Position numbers and translations under genes: made by a program
Assembly (NCBI RefSeq): GCF_021869535.1
Contig: NW_026262690.1
Span: 80,538,001 to 80,602,000 of the forward strand
Source: Mytilus californianus
Taxonomy: Eukaryota
Direction of reading: 5' to 3'
DNA: 64,000 bases
Shown here: piece by piece, positions 8,950-63,269 of the stretch
How the letters are laid out: each line of letters begins with the position of its first letter
Numbering within the stretch: the first letter of the stretch is position 1
Notes under the pieces: model-generated
Seen by the model: only the letters and a program-made list of their open reading frames with translations
The model's database searches: none
Told to the model about the DNA's origin: nothing

Positions 8950-10255
8950 TAAACTAACATTCTCAGACTTTCAGCAGACAAAGCCTCAAACAATATTGTA
9001 TTCATTTGCAAAATTATTATTTAGAATGGCCCTCTAAAGAACTTGGCATTCACAGCAAAATCACGAATCACACATATACCCTACATTATTCACGAAAGAG
9101 TCGATTTTATAAAATCATTAATCAGTCCTTCTCTCCTTTAGAATTAACATAAAAAAGGACGAATCGATAAAAATCTCCCATCTTTACACTTGATACTTAA
9201 ACGTCAACATGGTCGTCAAAATGTTCGACTTAACATCTTTTTTAAAGTTCTGAACACCATACTTCTACAGTAAAAGAAATATTGTGATGAGTTATATTCA
9301 ACCAGCGGTGTCAATCAGATGTTGATTCTTAAAAAAATCACAATGTTTACAATTGTGCAGTCATATCAAAACCTTTGAGTTTTGTACACTTTATACTTCT
9401 ATTCCCCATGCAAGATTGAAAGATCGACTCATAAAAAAGAGTATGAAACAGAATTCATACAGAACCTTCTCAATTATATAAAGAAAAAGCATCTTGTTAA
9501 GTTCTTTAATTTCACTCTCAGATATATTGATGATTACTTGTCACTCGATTACCCACATTTAATGCGAACTTAAAGTTCAGGTGTCCTAGTAAACCCTTGT
9601 ATTAAGGATACTACCAAAAGTAGAAAATCTACTCCAGATCCTGATATTTTCCTTGATATTGACACAGATGGACGACTTCAAACTAGAATCTATGAAAAAC
9701 GTGATGATTTCAACTTTTTTATTGTCAACTTCCCATTTCTTAGCAGTAACATATCATCTGCTCCGTTGTATGACGTTAACATATCTCAGTTAATACGCTA
9801 CGCTCGTGCATGTTCACATAAAGCGGAATTGGTTAACAGGTGCGTGCTTCTTACACTAAAACTGCTCAAAAAGAGTTATGAGGAAGAACGACTAAAATCG
9901 GCACTACATTAGTTGTACGATCACCATCCCGAATTATTTGATAGATACGATGCGTCTGTGTCTCAACTCACTAACGACAACTTTTCGCGGTCTTATATAT
10001 TGAGAAACTAGCATAGTCGTCTATTCTGTAATTTTACCGTTTGTGTCTTATTCCCGATTGTGACATGTTGACTGAGTGGGTATTTGCATGCCGGATGATG
10101 CATGCATAACAGAAGATGCTTACCCTGTCGACGAACCCGGGCTCGCTTCTTTTGGAGTTCGTGCGATTATATCGGTTTTTGTGTGTTTCCTTGATTTGTC
10201 TCTTCTTGATCGATTTACGAGATTTGAACATCGGTTAAATACTGTCGCCTTAATT
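8950..10255 (+). mobile_element. Degraded Penelope-like retroelement RT with 3' UTR
   Basis: Translations ADKASNNIVFICK (about 8975), KNLPSL, FNFTLRYIDDYLSL (about 9510), RIYEKRDDFNFFIVNFPFLSSNI, SQLIRYARAC; stops and internal deletion. Confidence 0.8.
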
Positions 10256-11089: not shown

Positions 11090-11439
11090 TTATCCTGATT
11101 CTAAAGAGGACAAATAATTTGCTAAACTCAGATTTTGTTCTTCTAATTCAACTATTCTTTTTCTCAGATATTTAATTTCGGCTTCAGTTCTCGTTCCATA
11201 CTCATGTATTTGACTTTGAAGTGTTTCTATTTCATCCTTTCTCTTTTCTTCCTTGTGCTGTTCTCTTTTTAAAGACCTGTTGTATTCATATAGCAGAAAT
11301 GATGCAGAGATTGCATAAGCTAATGTTTCTCCAAGTAATTTTGTACCTACGGCAAAGGCTTCATCTTCTGATAATGATTTTTCTCGTTCACCAACACCAA
11401 GTAATTTACTTTGTACTATGCAATCCATTGAATGATACC
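11090..11439 (-). CDS. OPA3: OPA3-like protein A, exon 2 of 2 (spliced product 159 aa)
   Basis: Acceptor ttttcAG at 11441-11440; A|GG completes Arg, then YHSMD..LSEDEAFAVGTKLLGETLAYAISASFLLYEYNRSLKREQHKEEKRK, matching the OPA3 core plus coiled-coil tail; stop at 11090. Confidence 0.9.
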
Positions 11440-13437
11440 CTGAAAAATACAATTAAAAATCTATCATAAAGATTTATCGGAATAAAGAGGTCATCATTTT
11501 AAAATTTAAAATTTCAAGGAGCTTATGTTGATTACCTAGTACATAATTGTCACTGATAATACTTAATGTGTCTGATATTATTTGTTATACATTTGCAATT
11601 ATATCAATTGCACAAATTTACTGTCAGTTCAATATCTAGAAACAGCTCCATCGTCATGATATAATGTATTATATTTCATTTGGTATATTTGAATTCGAAG
11701 ACCAAACTGAAGAAAATTGTCCCCTCGGTAATTGTGTTAAGAGAGACAGAGCTGAATTATGTTCCTCGTCCTAAAAAAACGTTTTCATCAGTTGTTTGCA
11801 ACCAGTAGAAAAAAACAGTTTTTAAGAATTTTAATGTCACTCATGCTTATTCCATTCCTTCACAATTAAGAAAAAGTATTTTGTTTTTTTTTTTTAATAT
11901 TTCTTAAAAATTCTTTGTTAATCAGATTATTCATAAAAATAATTTAAAAAAATGCAATCCTTCCTTTTCACAAATATGACACACATGTCACCAATAGGTC
12001 TAACAGGCTGGTTACTTAAGAATACCAAAAAAAAAAAAAAACTTTTATGGTACTGAACCTGAATTTGAATTTTGAGGCTAATAATAGTTATTATCAATTT
12101 GAACTTAATCCAAAAATTTATCAAAATTGAGATTTTCGAGATACAACAAACGTAAAGAGGCCAGAATTTTTTTTATTCTTTATAAAATACATAAACCTCA
12201 ATTTCTGGCAATTGATTCAATGTACATTTTAACCATCAATATAATATATATAAAACCTAAAACAAAAATTGAGGAACTGTATCTCCGAAGTAAATCAAGC
12301 CGAAGAAAACGAATGCTTTCAATAAATTTTTAGCAGTCACCATGAAAATACAAGATTGTATAACAAAGTCCGGGACATTCACATCATTGCAGAAGGGTAA
12401 GTCTAGTGTTAAAAAGGACATATTCAGACACAAAAATACCTAGACCATAGAAAAGGCCACGCACTAACAGTCTCAAAGATAGTTCAGATTAACCCTTTAC
12501 CGTTGAGCAAAATCTCTACATCATTTTCAAAATTTCAAGTGCAAATACCTAAAACCAAATGATGCTATATGCCCGTACATCCACCATTAACTAGAAATCG
12601 GCCATACATGACATTTTCTCATTAATTGTTCTTATGCAGAACACATTACATAAGGTTAGAATGGTGTGTTTTGAGGTGAACACAAACGGATAAACTTCCG
12701 AAAGTAAATAAATTTTTCCTGCTGAACTGTTGAAAAGATATTCTTTTTTGTTTCATATTAGCGCTAAATTGACTTAAAATCGGCCAACTGGAAATAATCA
12801 TGTGGAGCACGGGTAGATAAAGAAAGCTTGTTTTCTTAGAAAGTAGCTTACAATAATTTTCAAATGCAAATGATGCATGTTCAAATTTTTCACAATAACT
12901 CCAGCTGATGTAAAAACTGAATACTAAGTCGGCAAAATTTATGCTACTGTTTCTTTCTTTTCTAGTTTTTTTTATCAGTTTTAGCTTATTTTATATAGCT
13001 TTATGAAAGTCGGCCAAAATCGATCAGTAAACTGCAGTACACTACAGTAAGTCAAGAAGAGTAGCTTCACATTTTCTGACAATTAGTTAAGGAAAAAGAT
13101 TATAATTTGGCTATTTTTCCGCATAAATAATTAATAAAAAAAAATGTTGCACATAGATGTTGGGAATGTAACGATTTAAATGTGTAAAAATAAATTTTCC
13201 TTGGCCTATTTTATTGGAAAAACCCACACGACAAAGACATTTGTTTACAAACTATTCCATCTTCCCTTTTAATCGTTAAATAAAAGACTTCTATTTGTAA
13301 ATTCGATTCAAAGAAACGCAACTTTACACACACATATACAATTGTTTTCACTTTTTTGCTTAAATTTCATCTTTAACAGTCGTTGAGCAAAGTGAAAGTA
13401 GATGTTCTATTTCTGCACTCTGAAATTCATTTCTTAC

Positions 13438-13567
13438 TTTGAGCAACTGGCACAATAATTGAACGAAATGTTTGATTTCGTTTTGACAATACACTAAGTC
13501 TATGGACAATTGGTCGTGTAAACTGTCTGATTAGTAAAGTAACCAATTTTACGATTGGCAATACCAT
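13438..13567 (-). CDS. OPA3: OPA3-like protein A, exon 1 (130 nt; missed by the ORF track)
   Basis: MVLPIVKLVTLLIRQFTRPIVHRLSVLSKRNQTFRSIIVPVAQ then phase-1 GTAAGA donor at 13437; the AQ-x-YH phase-1 intron position matches what I recall for human OPA3. Confidence 0.9.
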
Positions 13568-13680
13568 ATTTTCGTCTGCATTGAGTTGGAACGGTGGTAT
13601 TTGATTTCCGGGAACTAGTTGTCGCGGTTTCCCAGACGCTTCACTTTTGCAATAAATAATTTTTGCTTTCTCTGGCGTAG
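13568..13680 (-). promoter_or_regulatory. Conserved 5' block of the OPA3-like genes
   Basis: TTGCAAAA..AAGCGT..AACCG(A/C)GA..AAATAC.ACCGTT.CA.CTCAATGCA shared with 17085-17194 (+), 53704-53765 (-) and 61575-61684 (+); TTCCGGGAA at 13606-13614. Confidence 0.6.
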
Positions 13681-14759
13681 GATTCTAACTCACTGCTCGA
13701 TGGTATGTTACAGAGATGTGGCCATGATCCGAGCTTACGTTTTCTCTCATTCGTAACTACTCGACCTTTTTCGGTATTCTGAAAAACTAACCTGGTATGA
13801 AAAACCGGCGATTGACCATCAAATCTCCGTTTCAAATATCTTGTCCTTTCAGACTATGATTGGCAATATTCCACTGAATATGACCATCTACTATACGATA
13901 GGGCGACTTAATTATGAAATTTCCTCATTGTAGACAATACATAGAGAAATATTAGGTAGGATCGTAGATACAGGAAAAATTATAAGGGTTGATGATGGCC
14001 ATCTGTGAGAATAAGTCAACTTGTGTTTAACTGTTTGTGTTGCACTGCCAAAGATACAAGTTAACACAGGAACCTCGATATTTTATTGTTAATATTAAAC
14101 TTTGAACAACATCAACGTATATTAGGTTTGAAACTCCCGTTTCAGGTTGTGAACAATCGCATCAATTACAGTAAACCTGTTTACAATGCAAAAGCAAAGT
14201 CTTTTAATTTGAATTTTAGCAAATATATTTGAAATAGTTTAGACCAAATGTACAGGTTGAAACTTGGTAAGGGGCTTATAAAAAATTGAAGAATATTCAA
14301 GATTAACCATTTACAAATCTCCAATTTTCTAATGAATAACACCAATGACTCCATTGGCATATGCATTATAGGCATAGCTATTACAGTTTATTCATAGAAT
14401 TGTGGACACAACATGTCAACCTGACTCCATTGGCATATGCAAACAGGCATAGATAGCAGCATTCTTTTTCTTATCATTTCTGTACTTCTTGCGTTTTAAT
14501 ATGATAACTTGCCTGGAAAAGTTAGATCTAGGTCCTTTTCCACATTTCAATACAAGTATAACCCTTTTTTAATCTTTTACTATGATATTGATATGATTAA
14601 ATTTTCTTTTGTCCATGTTAAACCGATACAAGAATCTTATCATTTGTATTTAAGGAAAAGTGCTAATTTGAAATAACGAAATACCCTAATTAACAGTTTG
14701 CCAGACAGACATAAATAACAGTTTACCAGACAGACATAAATTACGTATCTAAAATAAAT

Positions 14760-14882
14760 TTCCCGGGTGCGGGAATTTCTCGCTGCATTGAAGACCTGTT
14801 GGTGGCCTTCTGCTGTTGTCTCTTCTGTGGTCGGGTTGTTGTCTCTTTGACACATTCCCCATTTCCATTCTCAATTTTATTA
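14760..14882 (+). repeat. Short interspersed repeat; second copy at about 16095-16205
   Basis: gaagacc..tggtggccttc.gctgttgtc..ggtcggg..gttgtctctttgacacattccccatttccatt present twice. Confidence 0.7.
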
Positions 14883-15317
14883 AATTTTTATGATTTAAAA
14901 CATACATGTCTTACACTTTCCGTTGATAAATTTAAATTACCTTTATATTCAAATTTATTATATTTGAACTTTTCAAACGAAAATGGCAAATCAGTATAAA
15001 CAATGACCTTTTAAATGTTTGCAGTTCAATGAAGATTCTGAAGATAATATAAAAATAGGGAGATGTGGTACGATTGCCAATGAGACAACTATCCACCAAA
15101 GTTCAAATGAAGTGGATGTAAATATAAAATATATATAATTAAAATTTAAAGAAATAGAAAAAAATGTAATAATAAAAACTATTAGTAGACAGCTCTCTCA
15201 CAAGAAAAACACCCATAACTGTAAAATATAAGGGCATCGCTACAAGCAAGGGGACACATTCAATAGCATCAACTCAACACGAACAACAAACCCTGCAATC
15301 AATACAAAAATAGGGAA

Positions 15318-15554
15318 ATGTGATATGATTGCCAATGAGACAACTATCCACTAAAGTTCAAATTAAGTGGATGGGTAAGTTGACAGATATGATCGGAGAC
15401 CACTAAAACATGTATCCCATGAGTTGAGATAAGGACACCAAATCGTATTGGGGTTTTCTCATTGTTGAAGACCGTACGGTTGCCTATAATTGCTTTTATC
15501 CACTTTAATTGAACTTTGATGAATCGTTGTCTCATTGACAATTAAACCACATCT
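15318..15554. repeat. Inverted repeat of about 58 bp formed by two opposed copies of a short repeat
   Basis: atgtgatatgattgccaatgagacaactatccactaaagttcaaattaagtggat (15318-15373) vs its approximate reverse complement at 15497-15554; further copy at 15058-15120. Confidence 0.65.
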
Positions 15555-17194
15555 TGTTACTCGCGATATTTTCGCGAACTGCCCTTGAGAGCGAACTTTG
15601 TGACGATTTATTTTCGCGATTGTCGAACGTTGTTGATGTATTTGTTAAACAAGACATCGAATGCTGACATATTCTCAATGATCCATATTCGCGTGTCCTT
15701 TCGCTCTTGAAAATTTGCTTGTTTACAGTTTTGCTGACTTTCAATTTTAGATCAAATAATGATGATGCTAACTTAAAAAAACAAAACTAATACATGTGCT
15801 CCTAACAAAGAACTGAATACTGATTTTCTTAATTATGTTTTTAGATAATCCAGCCAGGTCATATCTTTTCTAAGCGACATTAAATATTTATCATAGATTA
15901 AATCTGTTATCAATCAACCTGCTTGACTTGCAAATAATCATACGAATAACAGTGGGGTGGGATGTACATTAATGGAATAGCAACTCAACGACATCTACAG
16001 GTCGAAATAAGGTCTTCGACTATACATAAGTGAATCAATACTATTATGTCAAGCCCTAAACAGCTGTTTTACCAAAGAATTAAATACAGAAATTTGCTAA
16101 GTTTGCATGCTTGAAGACCCATTGGTGGCCTTCGGCTGTTGTCTGCTCTATGGTCGGGTCGTTGTCTCTTTGACACATTCCCCATTTCCATTTTCAATTT
16201 TATTTAAAATTGTTGGAGGAGTTATTGACAATTGGGACCTTCCTTTATTGTAAATTGACCTGGTTTGACCATCTGGACATTAAGTCTTAGGTTACACAAA
16301 TTGCAGTGCTCATTTTCAATGTATATATATATACTAGAGAGAGATTTAAGAAGTCTTACTGCTGATCGTTGAAAACTGTAGGATAAGTTGTTTACCTCCA
16401 TAAAAACAGGAAATCTCTCGTTTCCCAAATGTAGGGACGTTTTGAACTGATATTTATCCATAATGTTATTAATTCTTTATTCTTGTTTTAATCATGCGGC
16501 TTTTTGTGTTGTTTGTCTTGCTTAATCTTTAGTTTTTTTATGTCGTGATTGTAAATTGTGGCTTTTCTTTTTTTGCCATGATTTTTCCGTCTATCTCCAG
16601 CCTTTGGTATCTGTCGCCACTCTTTTTCAATATAAGAACAGTATGGGACAGAGCTAGGAAAATTTTGAAAATTAAGACAATAGAACTCATCATTGCTATC
16701 TATAGTCACTTCTCTTTCATATCAACATTGTTTAAGATTTTCCGCTTATCTTGAAAAAAATTTCAATCAGCTTTACTAAGATATTTAGAAAAGTGACAAT
16801 CTGAGGAAAAGTTGTAATAAACGTCAACGTAGACAGATCTTTTACGGAATTTTCCAATTGTCAAAGCCATACTCCCGTCATCATTTTCTTGATATTTGAT
16901 ATAGTTACCTCATTAGACTTAACACCGAATATTTACTTACCATGAGAAACATGCTTTTTATGCATCATTTAAAATTTATGGTATACTTAAACGGATTTCC
17001 TACTTTTCCCCGGCAATACAAGTCATACAGATGGACTTCTTTTGTTCACCCAGTTGATAATAATAGAATCCCAGGCTAGAGAAAAACCTAGATGTTGTTT
17101 GCAAAAAGTAAAGCGTTAGGATAACCGAGACTTCATTAGATTCAGGGAAGTAAATACGACCGTTTCACCTCAATGCAGTCGAAGGTATTCAGTC

Positions 17195-17435
17195 ATGGTA
17201 TGGCCAATAGCAAAATTGATTCTTCAACGTGTTGCATTACTTGTCAAAGAATCTTCAAGAAGAATTAAAAAAAGAAGATCGTCAAACCCCAAAGAAGACG
17301 AAAATGTAAATTTGCCAATTTTTCATTTGGTCACTTTATTTATCAAAGAGAATATAAGACCAGTTGTAAATAGATTTAGTAAATCGATTAAGCAGAATCC
17401 TCAGTTTCGTGCAGTCATTGAAAGAGTTGCACAAA
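17195..17435 (+). CDS. OPA3: OPA3-like protein B, exon 1 (241 nt, duplicated N-terminus)
   Basis: MVWPIAKL..RRIKKRR..VNLPIFHLVTLFIKENIRPVVNRFSKSIKQNPQFRAVIERVAQ then phase-1 GTAAGA donor at 17436. Confidence 0.85.
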
Positions 17436-20074
17436 GTAAGAATTATAAAATTACCTTTTATTCATGCTACTAACATATATGTAACTTATTCAAGATTTCA
17501 GAAATAAAATGTCTACTTTCATTTCGCTCAGGGACAGTTAAGCATGAAATTTAAACAATGTGTATTTGTGTGTAAAAAGAATAAACAAAAATACCGAACT
17601 TCAAGGTTGATTAAAACAAAGGGGGAAGTCCATAAAATCTGACAAAATCAAACGTTAGACTATATCAACCAACGGTGTAGTAAAACAGTATTCACAAAAA
17701 TACCGAACTTCGAGGTACATTCAAAAAGGGAAAGTCCATAAAACCTGACAAAATCAAACATAAGACTATATCAACCAACGTTTTTTTTCTCTTTTTTTTC
17801 TTCAAATATTTGTTGCTTACAAATTACAGTTCATTATTTTACAATTAACAGGCGGAATTATAGTTGCTTACTTCCACTTAATTTTGTCTCTTGTAGATGG
17901 TTGTCTAGTTGGCAACCATACAGCATCTTATTTTCCTGTTGCTTGTCTTTTCGTTATTTTTTCTTCTTGCTCAAGGCGTTGTCTGGTGTTTTTTTTTACT
18001 TATAAATTTTTCAGCTTTTCAGGTGTAAGTTGGTTTGATTTATTAGGATATAGTCGTTTCTGTATATTTTAATGCCAACCCCAGATTGACCATCGAGTAC
18101 TAATCTTGAATGAAGTGAATATACAATTAGACTCTGGTACAAACTAGTATATGATTACGTAGTTTAGAGACGACTAATGTTGTCTTAAGAGTTTTTTCTC
18201 ACTTTGACAATGCAGTGATCCCTGATTGGAGCGTTTAATTTGTCTCCTGTTGATACATGTAAATCTAGTAAATGAAATAAACACTTTATAATTTCATTGC
18301 GTCCAAAGCGCTTTTCTTAATTTACCATCACCAGGAAAGCTCAAACACTAACATTTTAAAGCGAGAGATGTATTATAACTTATAAATGGTAGAAGCTACA
18401 TAGCAAAAAGGGACAGAAAACAAATAACTAAATTCACCTAAGATAAACTTTGCCTGTGGAAGTTTTTTGGATTTTTAGTTTAATTTCTACATTTATCAAA
18501 AGCCTAAAAGAAATCACTGCGTGTAACTTTTCTTTAACAGTACATTTGATATCCCCACCCCTGTTTCAATTTTTGATTTATAAAGAATTTGAAACCAAGA
18601 CTTTAATTATTGTTAGCTTACCCTATGTGCATGTTTTCTGAAATGAAATGTCTAGAACCTGTATGAAACTCCTCTGATAACAAATCGAAAGCATTTCAGA
18701 ATACTATAATTGCAAAGTTTAATAGTTCAGCATTCCAACATTCAAGATTATATAAAGTATCCAATTCTGCCTCTGTCTCCAGTCCACATCTTACTGTATG
18801 CCCATTTATCTATAAAAGTTCACACTTTCTGCCTCAAATGTTCAGTTTAGAAATCTTGCCACAATAGTATCATCTTTAAACAAAGCCATAATTGCAAAAG
18901 TTGTATGTATGAAGTTACCAGTTTGATATATAAATTGATTAAAAGTTTTATAGAACTGACTGCTAAAATCTAATTTTTGCATAACTTCAAAGCAAGTTTA
19001 TTGTTGTCTTTACAAAAGACCTTTATATTAATAAAATCATATCCTTTACAGGTTAAATCATCTGATGTATGATCCATATATATTTTTAGGATAGAACACA
19101 CTATTGTTAGTTTTATAGAGGTATTTTTGTATCTCTAGCTTGTACTTTGTTATGCCGCAGTCACAAAAAAGCACAGGCAGGTGTTGCGGCTTACTTATGG
19201 GTTTTCGACAGGACAAAAACACCCCAACAACAATGTTCATCAAGGATCTATAAGTTTCAATGACTGTGAAGAGTAAATATAAGAACTTCTTAACAATTTA
19301 AATTACATATATGCATATGTTATGAATTTACTTTGCATACAGGGCTTTATGTAAACTATGCATACTGTAAACTGTGAATTTATGCTGAGTTATCATATCT
19401 AAGGCACAGGATTTTCTCAATCTTCATGAAATATTTATTTATCTTTATATTTGAGTTAATTTCATTAAAATCTCTAAAAATAAACCAGATTTGGTGAAAT
19501 TCTTCTTGTATTCTTTTTTTCACACTCTATAAAAGTTGCACTTCTGTAAATATAGACAATGCAATTTCCCATAGAATCTCCTTTTACTACTAAAATTGTG
19601 CCACTTTTACAATGAAGTTTCGTAAAAAATTATATCCTATATGCTCTAATATTTTTACAAAGGGCAAACCATAGGGCTGTGCGGCATATTTTCAACATTC
19701 ATATACCCCGAACTTCTAAGAGTTTAAACTTATACTTAAATTCTGTACTACCCCTCCCTTCACTTTGGGTCTTCCTCAGAACTCAATTTGACGGCTATCC
19801 ATGGGTATTTATACTAGTAAAATTTCCAATTTGTGTCTCTATGAGATATAGAATAGAATCATATCTGGGAACCAGTAGGTAAACAAAACAAAATATATTT
19901 GAATATTATATATCTCCCCAAAAGAGGCATGGTTTGTGAAACAGCTGTATTAACAAAATGCAACCTTTATATTCGTCGCTATTAATAAATTATGATAAAT
20001 GATTCAAAAGTTCTAAAAACAATTTTTTTTACCAATTGTTGGATTAAAGTGCATGTTGACAATTATTTAGCTCA

Positions 20075-24579: not shown

Positions 24580-25052
24580 GATATAATTTAATGATTTCAA
24601 GATCACAAAGTATATTACCAGTGAAACAATTATCAGACGAACAAGCGTACGATTTAGGAACCAAAATAGTTGGTGAAACATTAGTATATGCAATTTCTGC
24701 TGGACTTCTGTTAGCTGAATACAGGAGGTCTTCAAAAACTGATCAAATCAAGGAAGAAAAGAGAAATGTTGACATAGCAACACTTCAAAGAAAAACACAT
24801 GAACATGGAATGACTACAGAAGAACAAGACACTCAAATTAAAGAACTGAAGAGAAAAATAATTGATTTAGAGGAAAAATACAAGTTTAGCAGGCAGATTG
24901 TCTTCCTCTCTTTAATCAGTGTAATGTATAATGTAAGAAACTGCTTTTATACTAAACTAATTGTAAATGTCATTATTTTGTGCCTACAAAGTTTTCTTAT
25001 ATCAGTGTCTAAACAACATGGAATGAAATATCAATATCACATCACTAAATAG
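24580..25052 (+). CDS. OPA3: OPA3-like protein B, exon 2 (237 aa spliced if read to the stop at 25052; 3' end uncertain)
   Basis: Acceptor ttttttcAG at 24578-24579; A|GA completes Arg, then YNLMISRSQSILPVKQLSDEQAYDLGTKIVGETLVYAISAGLLLAEYRRS..KEEKR, coiled coil. Confidence 0.8.
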
Positions 25053-28000
25053 GTTATGGAATCGCTGCAGGCATTTTGTTATTTGAATACAACAGGCCTC
25101 CAAAATATGATTTGATCAAAGTAGTAGTGACACAAATTGTGAAATAGCACTGCTTCAAAGACAAAAACAAGAATATGTAATTATAACAGAACAACAAGAA
25201 ACAGAAATTAATGAATTGAGAATGAAAATGTTTTATTGAGATGAAAGAATTTTTTTACAAAGAAAAATGTTTTCATCTCTAAAATTAGAATATTGTGTGA
25301 TACAATATTACTCATTTATATTTTTTTGGGCCTGACTTAACCTTACACATATTACATGTACGAGTGTTAAGATGATATAGAATCAAATTATTAAATAACC
25401 TACCTTTCAAAATAGAATAAAAAAGATATATTATTGTGTAATCTATGACCAGAAGTGTGTTATTCAGATCATTTTAAATATGGGAATAAAGCAATGAAAT
25501 TTAAGCAAAATGTCCGCAATTTTGTGAGGATAAAGCATTTTGATATTGAGGTTCTATAAAGTAAATGTAATAGACATGAGAAACAAAGAAGTATTTTAAC
25601 TGAAGTTTACATCAATTAATTTTATAATATTTTTTAAAGATTTAAATCTAGAAATATTTATGTATGAAAATAATGCAAAACCAAAATAATTTATACAATT
25701 TCTTTATATATTACTAGTAGTCTCATGCTATAATGATTTTTCATCATTTTAGGTTGCAAATTTCTGCAAAAAATGTTTTTTTTTATATATAGCTATGAGC
25801 TTTACAAATGTATTTGAATGTTTTACTGCCATTTTTAATGGATGTTAGTGATGAAATCTGTCTGTATTTTCTGACAATTTTCTAGTCTTTCGACTTGTTG
25901 AAAGGGTATATTTGAACCACAATACTTTTGTTTGATCATAAGAAAATTTAAATCGTACATGTGTACGCAATGTGGAGTCTGAAATTATATTCTGGTGACT
26001 TCTTTTTTTGTTAACGAAGGAATATCCATGGGTTATCTCCTTGTATCTAGGATTGATAGGGAAGATAACTCTATTATTATTCTTACACAAATGTTCATAG
26101 ACATTCATTGATCATAAATCTTGATACATGTATGTTTTACACTTTTGTTTTGCCACCGTTATGAACTGAAATTTATTTGAAATTTTAACAACTACATATG
26201 AAAACTAATTATAATTCTTAATAAGCACCTTTTATCTGTAATATAAAATAATGTCTCCCATGAAAAAATGTTCGCGGACACTATTTCATCATGAAATACG
26301 GTAAAGGACAGTATTTCACTATAAAATAGTGTCCTTGTCCATGAAATTGTATCACCTCCTTCTTGACAATATTTCACTATAAAATTCTGTCCATGATAGT
26401 ATTTCACTGTGAAACACTGTCCTTGAAAAATATTTCTTAATCCAATTATGTCTTTCCTAACAGGAAATTGTGAGTGTTTTTAATATTTTATTTGAAAAGT
26501 ATGTGTGTATTCCATAATTATTTTATAAAATATTTATGCAAGGTTTGTTTGTTATTTTCAATCAAATAAAACACCTTAAGGTTCCACTAAAGTCAAAATA
26601 TAGGACACTTCATAAACATCGAAACTTTGCCTGTATTTTTCAACCTATAATGAGTAAAGTCCTAAACTATGAGAACATATGTTCATTTAAACATCCTTAA
26701 CATATACACACTGTGTAAATTGTAAATAAACTTGAAATTGTTATGTTGTAGCCAAACCGGTTCTTGGGGTGAACACTAAATTTTCCAAAAAATCTGGAGG
26801 CCTGCGAGACGACTTAATTTGCTTAAAATTGGTATGGACGAATACTGTTACATGTAATATCATTATCCAAAATAACAAATGTTTATATTCTCCTTTTCAT
26901 GAGACAAATTTCATGACAATCCATCTATGAAATATTGTCTTTATATATGTGACAGTAAATTTGTAAAATCAGGGATTATGCATAATCACTAAAATCATAA
27001 GTGGTTAAATATAATCCCTGAAAATGACCAGTGAATTTACATAATCACTGAAAATATCAAGAATTATTTTACAAATTCCCTGTAATATTTTCAGGGATTA
27101 TCAATAATACAAAGATTCTCTGTTTGGTACAAATAAATCATATGTATCACCTCTTTATTGTTTAAGTGGACAGTTCTCATTCCTTGTCCATTTATCAATC
27201 TTATTAAAATGAACATCTTTTCTGAGAATATTCTATTCAACTGTGTTAAACCACATTAACTCATAAACAAATAAGCTTTCTAAGTTGAAATTAATAACAC
27301 CAGCATAAATGCACAGATCATGTAACTTGCCGTACAACAAATGGATTGAGAGTTTGAGAACAAGGAATTCGAATTAAGCAAAGAAATGCATCTAAACGTC
27401 CAGACACACAAACAAAACACATGCTTGACAGATTGAAGACGATTGTGGAGGAGGCTGATATACCGATTCCGTATGTTGATCTTGAAAAGGGAGACCCAAA
27501 AAACATAATGGCCATCGTTCATAAAAGGGCTGAAAAGGATATTGCCTGACTACGAAACATGAAATTATGCTTAGATAATACACAAGGAATCAATTTGAGA
27601 TGTCTGATTGACCTTTTTAGCACCTTCAGATGTTTCTAATGAACCCTTTATTTTTCATCAAAGTGCAGTAAAATCAGATTCAATATGTGAAGGTTAAGGG
27701 TTTTTTTAGGGGGTGGGGGTTTGCCAAAAAAAAAGGATAAGCAGAGCAAATTTTCAATAGTAAAGAGTCGGGATGGGGTTTACCAAATAGAAAATAATAG
27801 GCAAACAATAGAATAAAGGGCTAAAAAATTAAGAATAGACAAAAATAGACCGAAAAAATAAGAATATAGAATAATAGTGTGCTAAAATATACATAATAGA
27901 GAATAATGAGCAAAATAAATATAGCTTAGAGAAAAAGAAAAAAATATCTAAACAATACAAGAATAAACAAATAAGAGATCCCCATCCAGACCCTCGTAGT

Positions 28001-45131: not shown

Positions 45132-45475
45132 TTATCTTGATTTAAGAGAGGACAGCGAGTTTTCTAAAATCCAATTTTTGACCTGTAATTTAAACATTTG
45201 TCCTTTTAGGTCTTCTGTTATCAATCCATGTTCATGTAATTCTTTTTGAAGTTTTTCTATTTCACACTTTCTCTTTTCTGCCTTGATCCTTTCATTTTTT
45301 AAAGACCTGTTGTATTCATAAAGCAGAAATGATGCAGAGACTCCGTAAACTAATGCTTCTCCAAGCAATTTTGTTCCTAAATTCATAGCTTCATCTGTTG
45401 ATAATGGTTCTACTGGTGTTGGTTTACCAAAACCAAGTAATTTTCTTTGTGATGTAAAATCCATTGAATGATACT
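45132..45475 (-). CDS. OPA3: OPA3-like protein A', exon 2 of 2 (spliced product 157 aa)
   Basis: Acceptor ttttttAG at 45477-45476; A|AG completes Lys, then YHSMDFTSQRKLLGFGKPTPVEPLSTDEAMNLGTKLLGEALVYGVSASFLLYEYNRS. Confidence 0.9.
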
Positions 45476-53573: not shown

Positions 53574-53703
53574 TTTGAGCAATCAAAACAATAACTGAAC
53601 GAAATTTTGGATGACGCGTTGCTGATACAGTAAGTCTATGTACAACTGGTCGTGAAGACTGTCTGATTAGTAAAGTAACCAGTTTTACTATTGGTAATAC
53701 CAT
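53574..53703 (-). CDS. OPA3: OPA3-like protein A', exon 1 (130 nt)
   Basis: MVLPIVKLVTLLIRQSSRPVVHRLTVSATRHPKFRSVIVLIAQ; phase-1 GTAAGA donor at 53573; intron 8098 bp. Confidence 0.9.
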
Positions 53704-54210
53704 ATTTTCGTCTGCATTGACATGGAACGGAAGTATTTAATCTCCGGGAACTAGTTATCTCGGTATTTCCGAAAAAGTATGTTTCCGTGATAATTAACAT
53801 TGTAATGTCATTTACTGTGGGATGGATGAATCAAAAATAATATGTAAGTCAAATGGATACAAGAAGGGGTTTCGGTCAAAAGCTGTTACATCGAGTGCAG
53901 TCAGATTGGTACCGCTAATGTTATTACTGACACGTGTTGAATATTTTTGTAACTAAAAAGGCTTAACTCATAAGTCTGAACTACTAGTACCACATCATTT
54001 GACTCTTTATCTATTTTCTCTATCTTTTTCACCATAGTCGTCAATTACCAGGATATTACACCCCCCGAAATCGTATTAAATACAAAACACAACTACTTAC
54101 TGAGATGTCATTAAAAACTTGACAACCGAATGATATCAGTTCAATGCAATGAATCCTTTACAGTTTACAAAACACAACATAGAAAACCAAAGACTGAGCA
54201 ACAACACATA

Positions 54211-59845: not shown

Positions 59846-61684
59846 TTTTCAGTATGTTCTTTTTGACCGGGCCCGATTTGGTGGTGTTGCGTCTACAAAG
59901 TGTATCCGAATTATTTTGCAAAGAATTATTATTAAACCTGTGCTAGGGACCGTCATAAACTTGCAGTGAGGGGAGATGTGTTAAAGGCATCATTGTGACT
60001 TTGAGATGAAGAACACCAACAAAGTGCTGTTCCTTTGCTTTTTGTGATTTTTACTGTGCATGTTCTGATTTTGTGTCATTGATGGTAACCCCATATCATT
60101 TGGTTTTTTTTTATCACTTATTAAAAAAACTGACCAAAAATACTTTATTATTTTTCACTCATTTTATCAAACTTGATTTCTTTTTGCCATTATGATTTAA
60201 ATTGTATTTCTATATCATGTGAAAATGAGGTTAAATTACTTTGAGTAACAACTAATTTTAGAAACTTCAATTTCAAATATTTTTTAAAAGGATGCAAGGC
60301 AATTAAATGAAAAGAATTGGAAAAACATAAACAGTCTGAGAAAACTTACAACTGTTTATTAATTTATGTCTAACTTCAGTTATTATCCTATGACTTGGCA
60401 TTTCTGAGCGAAACAAAAAACAAGACAAATAGATTTTTTTACAAGAACGTACGCTTCGCTTTACTCATGATAACTATCAGAATTCTTATGAAAAACTTCT
60501 GCAGATTTCAAACCTACTTTCACTAAAAACTTGAAGAATGCACACACAATTGCCTTTGAGAACTTAAAAATAAATAATAAAATACGTCAAATATGCTGCT
60601 TGCTATATAAAAAAAAAAACCAATTCATATAATGTCAGATATGTGAACACTGCTGAGGTACCTAGACCAAGAACCTCAAGTTATGGTGAAAGATCTTTTA
60701 GATTTTAATCAGCACAAATATGGAATTTCCATCCCAATGTGGCAAGAACTATGACTTCTTTTGATTTAATTAGGAATTATATAAATTCTTAGTATGGGAG
60801 AATAATGTAATTGCAGTTCAAGCTGTTTTTATCAAGTGCTGCCTCAAAGCTGAAATTTCCTCCTTTTTTCTGGCCTTTTGCTCTGCTTTTTTTTTTGCAT
60901 TAAAATATATAGCTGCTTTTAAATGCCAGTGCTTTCTTAATTATTTTTTTATTTTTTTTTTTTTTTTTGGTTTTTATTACATTTTTTAAATTTTGATATT
61001 TCAGTGATTGCTGGTTCTCCCATTAAATGTACATAGAGGTGTTTACCGCATGGGCATGACCCTGGAGGTTCAGAAATCAAGAATACTGTGCTTTCATTTT
61101 ATTTGCATGCCTTTTTATTTATTTGCATTTATATGAAGCTCCATGATTAGAGTTCTTCAGAGCTCATGTTTCATTTGTTATAGTGTACATATTAGCCGAC
61201 TTTGAATAAAGTTTATTACTAACTTATGATTTTATAGTAATTGGTTAATCCTCACCCCATTCTGTGCTCTAACCATGTATGGTTATTTGGATCATGCGCT
61301 TTTCCTTGCTGTTCGATTTTGTTCGCATGTCTCTTTTTAATGAGTCTCTTTTTGGTGCTTGATGTCATCCGTTGTACTTTTCAGTAGTTTTGGTATTACT
61401 CATTTATTCAGTATCTATTAAGTGTTACGGTTATACTTTTTTTCGTGTTCTTTAAGACAGCTACTTATACGGACTCCGTACTTTTATACAGGTAACATCT
61501 GCTCCATGTCAATGTGATAATAATAATGAATACTTTTTATTTCACCCAGTTGCATTAAAATTTCAGGCTAAAAAAAAACACAGAAGTTTGTTTGCAAAAT
61601 TCAAGCGTTTGTGTAACCGAGATTACCTTGATCACAAAAGTAAATACTACCGTTCCACCTCAATGCATCAATGCAGATATAGTC

Positions 61685-61925
61685 ATGGTATTACCAATAG
61701 CAAAATTTTTTCGACAACAAGCTAAATTACTTATCCAGGCGTCTTCAAATAGAATTAGAAAAAGAAGACAGCTCCAACTGAATGCAGACAATTATAAGGA
61801 ATCATCAATTGTAAAATTGATCAATTTACTAATCGAACAGTTTAAAAGACCAGTTGCAAATAGTGTTAGTGAATCGGCAAAGCAAAATCCAAAACTTCGT
61901 TCAGTTTTCGTAGGAATTGCTCAAA
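61685..61925 (+). CDS. OPA3: OPA3-like protein B', exon 1 (241 nt); exon 2 not found in the window
   Basis: MVLPIAKFFRQQAKLLIQASSNRIRKRR..SSIVKLINLLIEQFKRPVANSVSESAKQNPKLRSVFVGIAQ; phase-1 GTAAGA donor at 61926; same length as exon 1 of B. Confidence 0.8.
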
Positions 61926-63269
61926 GTAAGAACTGTTAAATAATCATATATTTAGGATATTAACAATTCTATATCTCATTTAAGAATGCTTAAATAAAAA
62001 AAAAGTCTACTTTCATTTTGGTCAGGGACAATTTAGGATTCGATTTTAGTATATAGTGTAAATGCTGGTATATTTGTGTAAAATGTTTTTTTTTTTTTTC
62101 ATTTTCCTTCCTTTTTTAAAATGTTTTACTACATAATGACAGTTTATTATTTCATGATTAAAAGGCAGTAGATGGAATAGATTTCCATAGTACGATTGTT
62201 TACACTTTTTTGTACGTCATCGTTGGGATTTCCCCCAAGGTAAATATATAGTTTACACTTAAGGACGTTACGTTCTCTACTGAAATACTCTACACGAAAT
62301 AAATAATAACGGCCTGATCAATGTACAAAAGAATGAACGAAAAAAAAAATGATATACAGCAACAAACGACAATTACTGAATTGCAGGCTTACAGATATGA
62401 GAGTATTCGCAGTTACTGACTGCTATTTCAAAGCCAATAACAATTTAATAAGAAAACAAAATCTAGGACTAAAATAGCAGTTCACATCCAACATCCAATG
62501 GATTTAGTGTAAAGACGTCATTAACAGTGTAATGTGCAATGCCAAGATACAGGTATCGAACTTGTCTTATTTGGATATCAAAATTGTCCACGATTTCTAA
62601 TTTTGTATTATCTACCTTGTTTTAAAAGGGTGAGTAAAAAAATATGGGTTTTTTTCTAACACGCCAGTGCATCACATGATGAGGAGTAAAGCTATTAGCC
62701 TCCATAAACAGCCCTGTAAAGATGTATTTTTTAAAATTCAATTGTTTGGTTAAATCTTGTGTATGTATTGCTAAATGTAAAATCTTTGAAAACATAATAA
62801 GAACAGTTGTTGATCTGCTTAGTATTCATAATCGGTGTTAAAAAAACAGCTTTTAAGGGCCAAAATTATATGTTATTGAACAATCTCCTTTTAACCGATT
62901 TTAAATTACGTCCGTTGCAATTGAAAAACAGTTATATGTACAAAAAATGTAATGGCAATATTTAGGTTATCGAGGAAAATTATTTTAATTTTAGTATTAA
63001 TTCTTCTATGGTATCTTCAAAAAATACTCTGCTCATCTTATGATATATATTCATTAACAGTTCATGTCCAATGTGACCGAATTAGTATTATTGATGGATA
63101 CCCAGGCAAATTGCATCGTGTCATTAAAGGTATTTGTACTTAAATTTCAAGACAATAGGTAGTGATTTTACTCATATTTAAGATCTTAATGTTGACGACT
63201 TCAAGTTAATTTTTTTTAAATACACCTATGCCTGCTCCCAAATTGAATAAAATTCGACTGGCCATGTAA

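What the first reader, a model, noticed from the sequence alone, without database searches (positions are those of the whole stretch)
17195..17435. B-type OPA3 has a doubled N-terminus with a conserved basic cluster
Exon 1 of B and B' is 241 nt versus 130 nt in A types. It has a first OPA3-like start (MVWPIAKL / MVLPIAKF), then SSRRIKKRR / SSNRIRKRR, a short polar-acidic linker, and a second OPA3-like start lacking Met (VNLPIFHLVTLFIKE / SSIVKLINLLIEQ versus MVLPIVKLVTLLIRQ in A). The 37 aa extension has identical length in both copies despite many substitutions. The N-terminus carries the mitochondrial targeting information in OPA3; the added segment could be a cleavable presequence, an NLS-like signal or a topology switch. 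I know of no described OPA3 with this architecture, but could not search.
Basis: partly seen in the sequence, partly recalled or inferred. Interest (0 to 1): 0.72.

Follow-up and report, generated by a model that had tools for sequence, protein, structure and literature searches.

The report
OPA3 paralogs with duplicated N-terminal module

Summary
The window is Mytilus californianus. It holds four two-exon OPA3 genes in two head-to-head pairs. Exon 1 is 130 nt in A and A', and 241 nt in B (17195-17435) and B' (61685-61925).

I could also establish the origin. The extra 111 nt come from an in-frame tandem duplication of about 24-27 nt of 5'UTR plus the first 25-29 codons. That stretch is essentially the OPA3(1-30) mitochondrial targeting and anchor module. 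The second ATG was later lost, so codon 1 is the only in-frame start of exon 1.

Both proteins are already predicted in RefSeq (XP_052105926.1, XP_052105927.1). Orthologs with the same 37-codon extension exist in M. galloprovincialis and M. edulis type genomes. A full HMMER scan of 1.84 billion representatives found the architecture nowhere outside Mytilus, and no paper holds both OPA3 and Mytilus.

Spliced RNA contigs include the extension. The first helix (codons 1-21) is about as conserved as the core. In B, the basic cluster and linker vary freely but keep the frame, and the cluster is degenerate in the B ortholog. B itself evolves fast and has a frameshifted C-terminal tail.

The presequence, NLS and topology-switch ideas remain untested. 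The scan had already noted the gene cluster on this window (s1-287926).

The parts
17155..17194 (+). B proximal 5' region, homologous to the A-type 5'UTR (element accgtt.cac.ctcaatgcag); holds an out-of-frame upstream ATG at -22
   Evidence: Sequence comparison of upstream regions; upstream ATG positions; X1 RNA contig starts at 17157
17195..17257 (+). B codons 1-21: first copy of the OPA3 N-terminal amphipathic helix, with a 4-codon insertion relative to A types; holds the only in-frame ATG of exon 1
   Evidence: BLASTP E = 6e-6 against the A N-terminus; DNA z = 6-13; 4/63 nt differences from the ortholog; ATG scan
17258..17278 (+). B codons 22-28: basic cluster RRIKKRR, aligned with the ancestral RP(I/V)VHRL stretch of the first copy
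   Evidence: reads RRIAKKG in the B ortholog
17279..17305 (+). B codons 29-37: polar-acidic linker SSNPKEDEN derived from the duplicated 5'UTR (A types read ..ADEN in frame just before their Met)
   Evidence: tblastn alignments reach into the A and A' 5'UTR; DNA alignment
17306..17435 (+). B codons 38-80 plus 1 nt: ancestral 130-nt exon-1 coding part, start codon lost (GTA); beginning of the Pfam OPA3 domain
   Evidence: Pfam PF07047 on residues 43-155 of P0001, 75.4 bits; omega 0.30 between orthologs; spliced RNA contigs 17280-17436
24580..25052 (+). B exon 2; the C-terminal end is frameshifted relative to A, A' and B', so it reads about 47 extra residues from what is 3'UTR in B'
61685..61925 (+). 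B' exon 1 with the same 37-codon extension (basic cluster 61748-61768, linker 61769-61795); exon 2 lies beyond the window
   Evidence: P0007 = XP_052105927.1; RNA-run word shares up to 0.75
13438..13567 (-). A exon 1 (130 nt), the unduplicated comparator
   Evidence: spliced RNA contig 13437-13578
53574..53703 (-). A' exon 1 (130 nt), the unduplicated comparator
11090..11439 (-). A exon 2
45132..45475 (-). A' exon 2
62952..63131 (+). Alternative first exon of the B' RefSeq isoform X2 (P0008); it bypasses exon 1 and so removes both N-terminal copies
   Evidence: tblastn 100% over 60 aa; Pfam matches only profile positions 38-119

Best explanation
B and B' are Mytilus-specific OPA3 paralogs. In their common ancestor, a short tandem duplication in exon 1 copied about 24-27 nt of 5'UTR plus the first 25-29 codons. 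With a 12-nt insertion in the first copy, the added length is now exactly 111 nt, which is in frame. The upstream ATG sits in a strong context (G at -3 and +4) and became the start. The second ATG then mutated away (GTA in B, AAG in B'). The extension therefore has to be translated for the conserved OPA3 domain to be made at all. The protein starts with a fresh copy of the OPA3 N-terminal amphipathic helix, which in human OPA3 is the residue 1-30 mitochondrial targeting and outer-membrane anchor module. A basic junction and an ex-5'UTR polar linker follow, and then the old N-terminus as an internal helix. I infer that the new N-terminal copy has taken over mitochondrial targeting and anchoring. 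It has net charge +6 to +8 with 0-1 acidic residues, whereas the internal copy has gained acidic residues. The junction is constrained mainly to keep the frame and stay basic or polar. Shown here: the duplication, its age (before the B/B' split and before the M. californianus / M. galloprovincialis split), transcription and splicing, and frame conservation. Inferred: translation, and the division of labour between the two copies.
For: Origin: the sequence upstream of the first ATG of B and B' matches the A and A' 5'UTR, and the B' linker (ctccaactgaatgcagac) matches the same element again. Both units score far above shuffles against the A-type 5'UTR plus start: unit 1 z = 6-13 for most pairs (minimum 3.6), unit 2 z = 15-39. 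At protein level E = 6e-6 and 3e-4.

Translation: codon 1 is the only in-frame ATG of exon 1 in all four intact B-type sequences. The core has omega about 0.3, and the pooled count of 21 nonsynonymous to 15 synonymous changes departs from the neutral expectation with p = 0.005. The 37-codon frame is open and indel-free in four sequences, with P about 0.025 under neutral substitution alone. In B orthologs the junction looks like compensating +2/-2 and +1/-1 indels that restore the frame.

Constraint: pN for codons 1-21 is 0.06-0.08, against 0.075-0.13 for the core. The B' extension is 91% identical between species, against 69-81% with indels in its flanks.

RNA: spliced contigs in three runs cover 17280-17436 and continue into exon 2. 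Collinear contigs cover 17157-17306 (X1) and 17178-17306 (X4) at equal or higher depth. For B' exon 1, run X3 holds 0.75 of the sampled words.

Databases: RefSeq models contain the extension.

Function of the duplicated module: OPA3(1-30) restores mitochondrial targeting of a PINK1 fragment, and its authors use it as an outer-membrane anchor (PMC2811155). The 30 N-terminal residues are necessary for targeting (PMC3678461).
Against: Pooled dN/dS for the extension does not differ from neutrality (20 nonsynonymous to 6 synonymous, p = 0.48). In B orthologs omega is 1.2, and extension identity (85.6%) equals that of the nearby non-coding flanks (84-88%).

B has the longest branch in the family tree (0.62). 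It has a frameshifted C-terminal tail and no reads in the sampled 6% of the raw RNA run X21, so it may be decaying.

The M. edulis assembly has a 1-nt shorter A-run that breaks the frame between codon 21 and the basic cluster.

RefSeq isoform X2 of B' skips exon 1 altogether.

Contigs cannot show transcript starts, and the contig graph breaks at 17277 in all three runs. I read this as a polymorphism bubble, but an internal start is not excluded.

The AlphaFold model is of low confidence (pLDDT 41-51 over the extension). There is no localisation or protein-level evidence.
Confidence: 0.6

Rival explanations
1. The extension converts OPA3 into a protein with a bipartite or cleavable matrix-type presequence. 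The strongly basic amphipathic first copy engages TOM/TIM23. The hydrophobic second copy then acts as a stop-transfer or hairpin segment. The paralog would be re-routed to the inner membrane, or its topology flipped, possibly with cleavage after the basic cluster.
For: The first 28 residues have net charge +6 to +8, 0-1 acidic residues and a hydrophobic moment of 0.5-0.68, followed by a hydrophobic 13-mer (Kyte-Doolittle 1.95 in B). The Arg-Arg followed by Ser-Ser in B resembles an R-2 processing motif (from my own knowledge of such motifs, not tested). OPA3's N-terminal segment is the targeting determinant.
Against: No predictor or experiment was available. The second helix of B' is only weakly hydrophobic (1.28) and carries acidic residues. 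The putative cleavage context is not conserved between B, B' and the B ortholog. The junction evolves about neutrally in B.
Confidence: 0.15
2. The basic cluster is a nuclear localisation signal that gives B-type OPA3 a nuclear or dual localisation.
For: KKRR in B fits the loose K-K/R-X-K/R pattern, and RKRR in B' fits it only loosely because it starts with R (sequence; the pattern is from my own knowledge). The cluster is conserved in B' from three species and in M. californianus B.
Against: The B ortholog reads RRIAKKG, which has no such motif. The cluster lies directly behind an N-terminal amphipathic targeting helix, and it aligns with the ancestral RP(I/V)VHRL stretch of the duplicated copy. 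The underlying DNA is a purine-rich, indel-prone A-run.
Confidence: 0.05
3. The extension has no function of its own. B, and perhaps B', is a decaying or weakly constrained duplicate. The upstream ORF persists by chance, or productive transcripts avoid it through an internal start or an alternative first exon.
For: Extension omega is 1.2 in B orthologs and about 1 for B against B'. B has a frameshifted tail and a long branch. There is a frameshift in the M. edulis assembly. B' isoform X2 uses the exon at 62952-63131. Six differences in 150 nt between the RNA contig and the reference lie over the 5' part, against 1 in 157 over the core.
Against: No other in-frame ATG can serve the conserved core. 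The core is under purifying selection (p = 0.005). Codons 1-21 are conserved at or above the level of the core. The frame is kept in four sequences, P about 0.025, and five further samples carry an intact B' exon 1. RNA contigs cover the extension.
Confidence: 0.15

Closest known systems
Canonical OPA3 (Pfam PF07047; human OPA3, Mytilus 163-164 aa proteins P0005, P0004, P0002)
   Same: Two-exon gene with the phase-1 junction at the same place. A full OPA3 domain is present (75-100 bits). The N-terminal amphipathic helix is followed by an RP-V-N/H-R type motif. The N-terminal 30 residues are the targeting and anchor module in human OPA3.
   Different: B types carry that N-terminal module twice in tandem. 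A basic junction and a linker recruited from 5'UTR separate the copies, and the second copy lacks a start codon. The Pfam domain starts at residue 43 instead of residue 5.
Human OPA3A/OPA3B (alternative exons 2 and 3, exon 3 found only in mammals)
   Same: Diversification of OPA3 products by intragenic duplication (PMC3987911, PMC3678461).
   Different: There a whole 3' exon is used alternatively. Here part of exon 1 is duplicated in tandem and both copies are read in one protein.
Engineered tandem mitochondrial targeting sequences (2x or 4x COX8 leaders in reporter proteins)
   Same: Repetition of an N-terminal targeting module.
   Different: Those are artificial, identical, cleavable matrix presequences. 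Here the repeat is natural, the copies have diverged, and the module is described as an outer-membrane anchor.
Bipartite presequences (cytochrome b2/c1, PINK1, OPA1/Mgm1 type)
   Same: A positively charged amphipathic N-terminus followed by a hydrophobic segment.
   Different: No evidence of processing or inner-membrane sorting. The resemblance is compositional only.

Membership tests
OPA3 family (Pfam PF07047) | Match to the OPA3 profile above the gathering score (25.7 bits) over most of the model | tested here: met
   P0001 (B) scores 75.4 bits over residues 43-155, profile positions 1-120 of 121. P0007 (B') scores 99.6 bits over residues 43-159.
OPA3 family (Pfam PF07047) | Domain begins within a few residues of the N-terminus (residue 5-6 in canonical and A-type proteins) | tested here: not met
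   The domain starts at residue 43 in B and B', at residue 5 in P0005, and at residue 6 in A and A' exon 1. This is the variant feature, not a reason to exclude family membership.
OPA3 family (Pfam PF07047) | Conserved two-exon structure with a phase-1 intron after ..AQ | tested here: met
   CAAA|gtaaga donors in all four copies and ag| acceptors before (R/K)Y(H/N).M. Spliced RNA contigs support the junction.
OPA3 family (Pfam PF07047) | Mitochondrial membrane localisation directed by the N-terminal ~30 residues | not testable with these tools
   Known for human OPA3 only. No localisation data exist for the mussel proteins.
Classical monopartite NLS | K-K/R-X-K/R core conserved among orthologs | tested here: not met
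   KKRR in M. californianus B; RKRR in B', which is borderline because it starts with R; RRIAKKG in the B ortholog P0015.
Cleavable matrix-targeting presequence | Net positive amphipathic N-terminal helix lacking acidic residues | tested here: met
   The first 28 residues have net charge +6 to +8, 0-1 acidic residues and a hydrophobic moment of 0.51-0.68. This is a compositional test only.
Cleavable matrix-targeting presequence | Processing by the mitochondrial processing peptidase at a conserved site | not testable with these tools
   No cleavage predictor or proteomic data were available, and the candidate context is not conserved.

The most novel reading that the evidence does not exclude
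A natural tandem duplication of a signal-anchor and targeting helix has created a new bipartite import signal. It would send a paralog of an outer-membrane protein to a different mitochondrial sub-compartment or invert its topology. That would be an evolutionary route for re-targeting membrane proteins that also turns 5'UTR into coding linker.
Probability: 0.12. Interest if true: 0.6.

Novelty: new variant of a known kind. Interest (0 to 1): 0.35.

Why it matters
The case shows how a protein N-terminus can be rebuilt. A roughly 100-nt tandem duplication spans the start codon, recruits 5'UTR as a coding linker, and is then locked in by loss of the old ATG. The duplicated piece coincides with the OPA3(1-30) module used experimentally as a mitochondrial outer-membrane anchor. 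These mussel paralogs are therefore a natural experiment on what happens when such a module is doubled. If localisation or topology differs between A-type and B-type proteins, it would inform how signal-anchor and presequence pathways are told apart. If not, it is a tidy example of near-neutral N-terminal extension in an expanding gene family.

Tried and rejected
- Pfam on residues 1-37 alone gave no hit even at E <= 10. The profile starts after the MVLPI motif, so likeness had to be shown by BLASTP and DNA alignment.
- An ungapped DNA comparison of unit 1 with unit 2 at offset 111 stood out only weakly. Offset 111 ranked first for B' (49% identity) but not for B or the M. galloprovincialis copy. 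Comparison with A types was decisive instead.
- Raw RNA reads of run X21 gave zero depth on B exon 1 in the 6% of the run sampled. This says nothing about transcript start or strand.
- The AlphaFold2 model of B from an 8-sequence alignment had mean pLDDT 55.7 and 41-51 over the extension. It is too weak to support a helical hairpin, so no fold search was run.
- Rfam and tRNA scans of 12300-18200 found nothing.
- The word-index protein search with B' residues 1-80 found only the B' cluster. The full HMMER scan was needed to find the B ortholog.
- A paper search for OPA3 plus Mytilus returned no papers.
- A search for a citable source on tandem targeting sequences gave nothing useful, so that point is marked as my own knowledge.
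- I considered reading the contig start at 17277-17280 in three runs as a splice acceptor or internal start. I rate it less likely because collinear contigs cross it up to 17306 and overlap by exactly 30 nt (k-1), as expected at a polymorphism bubble.
- TargetP, MitoFates and cNLS predictors are not available here.

Full report
**What is there**

The window is AT-rich (32% GC) and contains no N runs. It comes from Mytilus californianus. The spliced product of 17195-17435 plus 24580-25052 is 100% identical to RefSeq XP_052105926.1 (P0001, 237 aa, 'uncharacterized protein LOC127738643').

tblastn with the exon-1 peptide finds four OPA3-like first exons:
- B: 17195-17435 (+)
- B': 61685-61925 (+)
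- A: 13438-13567 (-)
- A': 53574-53703 (-)

They form two head-to-head pairs, as the scan's cluster note s1-287926 also says. All four exons end in CAAA|gtaaga. Their second exons begin after ag| with a split Arg or Lys codon. Exon 1 is 130 nt in A and A' and 241 nt in B and B'.

**Where the extra 111 nt came from**

Three pieces of sequence share one element:
- the 20-30 nt just upstream of the first ATG of B and B' (..accgttccacctcaatgcag..);
- the 5'UTR of A and A' (..accgttccaactcaatgcagacgaaaatATG);
- the 'linker' inside B' (ctccaactgaatgcagacaattat, codons 30-37).

In B the linker ends in gacgaaaat, exactly the last nine 5'UTR bases of A. This is why tblastn alignments of B to A run into A's 5'UTR ('DEN' before the Met).

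Local DNA alignment against shuffled controls gives z = 6-13 for most pairs for unit 1 (upstream region plus first 29 codons). The minimum is 3.6-3.8, for M. galloprovincialis B' against its own A' type. Unit 2 against the A-type 5'UTR plus start gives z = 15-39. At protein level, residues 1-37 match the A and A' N-termini with E = 6e-6 and 3e-4, given a 4-residue insertion.

The extension is therefore an in-frame tandem duplication of about 24-27 nt of 5'UTR plus the first 25-29 codons. A 12-nt insertion in the first copy brings the total to 111 nt. The basic cluster aligns with the ancestral RP(I/V)VHRL stretch of the first copy. The second start codon has been replaced (GTA in B, AAG in B').

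**How old and how widespread**

- B' has orthologs with the same 80-codon exon 1 in M. galloprovincialis (P0011, VDH93159.1, 200 aa; locus L002). There it again sits head-to-head with an A-type gene and is followed by a C1q gene.
- Five Logan assemblies of one study also carry it.
- M. edulis has it too (P0009, locus L001). In that assembly an A-run is one base shorter, which breaks the frame after codon 21 and makes the annotators start at another ATG. I cannot tell whether this is an assembly error or a real lesion.
- A B ortholog (P0015, locus L003) is present in the same sample as an M. galloprovincialis-type B'. The B/B' split therefore predates these species.
- An exhaustive HMMER scan of 1.84 billion cluster representatives with B' residues 1-80 returned only three proteins at E <= 1e-3. 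They are the B' cluster, the B ortholog, and a canonical M. edulis OPA3 aligned only over residues 42-80.
- The word-index search found nothing more, and no paper holds both 'OPA3' and 'Mytilus'.

The architecture is thus Mytilus-restricted as far as these libraries show. It is present in databases as unnamed predictions and is not described in the papers searched.

**Is it expressed and translated?**

Runs X1, X2 and X4 behave as RNA. They hold spliced contigs and have zero depth over unique intergenic sequence.

For A, a 719-nt contig covers 13437-13578 and continues into exon 2. For B:
- contigs cover 17280-17436 and continue (a 1253-nt contig in X2);
- collinear contigs cover 17157-17306 (X1) and 17178-17268 plus 17239-17306 (X4), at equal or higher depth.

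The upstream and downstream contigs overlap by exactly 30 nt (k-1). The 5' contig differs from the reference at 6 of 150 positions. I therefore read the break at 17277 as a polymorphism bubble, not as a splice site or start. Contigs cannot prove this.

Raw RNA reads (X21, 6% sampled) gave about 0.9x depth on A exon 1 and none on B. B' exon 1 words are held by many RNA-type runs, up to a share of 0.75.

Four arguments support translation:
- Codon 1 is the only in-frame ATG of exon 1 in all four intact B-type sequences. The upstream ATG of the conserved caATGca element is out of frame and in a weak context, whereas codon 1 has G at -3 and +4.
- The core (codons 38-80) is under purifying selection. 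Omega is 0.30-0.35, and the pooled 21 nonsynonymous to 15 synonymous changes give p = 0.005 against the neutral expectation. The core can only be reached from codon 1.
- The 37 codons are open and of identical length in four sequences, with P about 0.025 under neutral substitution alone. Flanking non-coding alignments are full of indels.
- Between B orthologs the junction looks like paired +2/-2 and +1/-1 indels that restore the frame. This alignment is suggestive, not certain.

**Constraint on the extension itself**

| Comparison | Segment | Result |
|---|---|---|
| Two ortholog pairs pooled | extension | 20 nonsynonymous : 6 synonymous, the neutral ratio (p = 0.48) |
| B orthologs | extension | omega 1.2 |
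| B' orthologs | extension | omega 0.4-0.6 |
| B orthologs | codons 1-21 (duplicated helix) | 4/63 nt differ, pN 0.06 |
| B' orthologs | codons 1-21 | 6/63 nt differ, pN 0.08 |
| Both | core | pN 0.075-0.13 |
| B orthologs | codons 22-37 (basic cluster plus linker) | 12/48 nt differ |

By segment, the helix is at or below the core in pN and below the flank divergence. The junction in B diverges freely, and the cluster degenerates to RRIAKKG in the ortholog. The B' extension is 91% identical between species, against 69-81% for its flanks. The data are few. The fair reading is a constrained first helix, an obligatory reading frame, and a loosely constrained basic or polar junction.

**State of gene B**

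B has by far the longest branch in the family tree (0.62). Its last exon is frameshifted near the end. It therefore reads about 47 extra residues from sequence that is 3'UTR in B'. B is spliced and its core is constrained, but it may be drifting. B' looks healthier, with 99.6 bits to Pfam OPA3 and a normal C-terminus. However, RefSeq also predicts a B' isoform from an alternative first exon at 62952-63131 that lacks both N-terminal copies.

**Likely mechanism**

In human OPA3, residues 1-30 restore mitochondrial targeting of a PINK1 fragment, and its authors use them as an outer-membrane anchor (PMC2811155). The 30 N-terminal residues are necessary for targeting, with the N-terminus in the intermembrane space and the C-terminus in the cytosol (PMC3678461 citing Ryu et al. 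2010). The duplicated unit is essentially this module.

In B types the new N-terminal copy has net charge +6 to +8 with 0-1 acidic residues and remains amphipathic. The now-internal copy has gained acidic residues, with net charge 0 to +3 against +4 in A types. My best inference is that the first copy is the working targeting and anchor signal and the second has become an internal helix. The junction would be mostly a by-product that stays basic.

Less likely readings are a bipartite or cleavable presequence that changes sub-mitochondrial destination or topology, an NLS, or a functionless extension on decaying genes. The AlphaFold model (helix 2-30, break 31-40, helix 41-67) is too uncertain to weigh.

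**Verdict**

This is a real, well-defined structural variant of a known family. Its origin is now explained, and it is already in sequence databases but not in the papers searched. Functional novelty is unproven. Novelty class: new variant of a known kind. Interest: modest.

Operator notes: read laying was given 5,901 letters. The window has no N stretches.

Noticed in passing
window 25055-25284 (+): A degenerate partial copy of an OPA3 exon 2 (..YGIAAGILLFEYNRPPK.., ..LQRQKQEY.ITEQQETEINELR..), with a stop and frame breaks, lies directly after B's exon 2. It probably falls inside B's 3'UTR. No counterpart was seen after B' exon 2 in the M. galloprovincialis locus L002.
   Followed up: partly
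window 24875-25052 (+): B's C-terminus is frameshifted relative to A, A' and B'. The other frame still reads NTSLAGRLSSSL*, like the family's normal end. The used frame runs about 47 residues into 3'UTR-homologous sequence with hydrophobic stretches.
   Followed up: partly
window 62952-63131 (+): Alternative first exon of RefSeq isoform X2 of B' (P0008), inside intron 1. It encodes a signal-peptide-like hydrophobic N-terminus and bypasses the whole OPA3 N-terminal region.
   Followed up: partly
L001 about 10070-10080 (M. edulis GCA_905397895.1): An A-run one base shorter in B' exon 1 shifts the frame between codon 21 and the basic cluster. The annotated protein P0009 therefore starts at a different ATG (MQHSHGVY..). 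Assembly error or real lesion is undecided.
   Followed up: partly
window 14664-15648 and 16043-16239: Interspersed repeats between A and B have summed k-mer depths of thousands in the RNA contig sets and many chimeric joints. 14788-14889 and 16111-16214 are 89% identical direct repeats. No Rfam family or tRNA matched.
   Followed up: partly
window 13578-13600, 17160-17180, 53715-53735, 61655-61680, 61775-61790: A conserved element (ccgttcca.ctcaATGcaga) lies 12-25 nt upstream of the start of all four genes and is repeated in the B' linker. It contains an out-of-frame upstream ATG. In B' it is locally duplicated (tcaatgca twice). It may be a core-promoter or 5'UTR control element that was duplicated together with the start.
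   Followed up: no
window 16940-17030: A 329-nt contig of run X2 matches here over only 91 nt (4 differences) and continues into unrelated sequence. It could be a repeat or an upstream non-coding exon of B.
   Followed up: no
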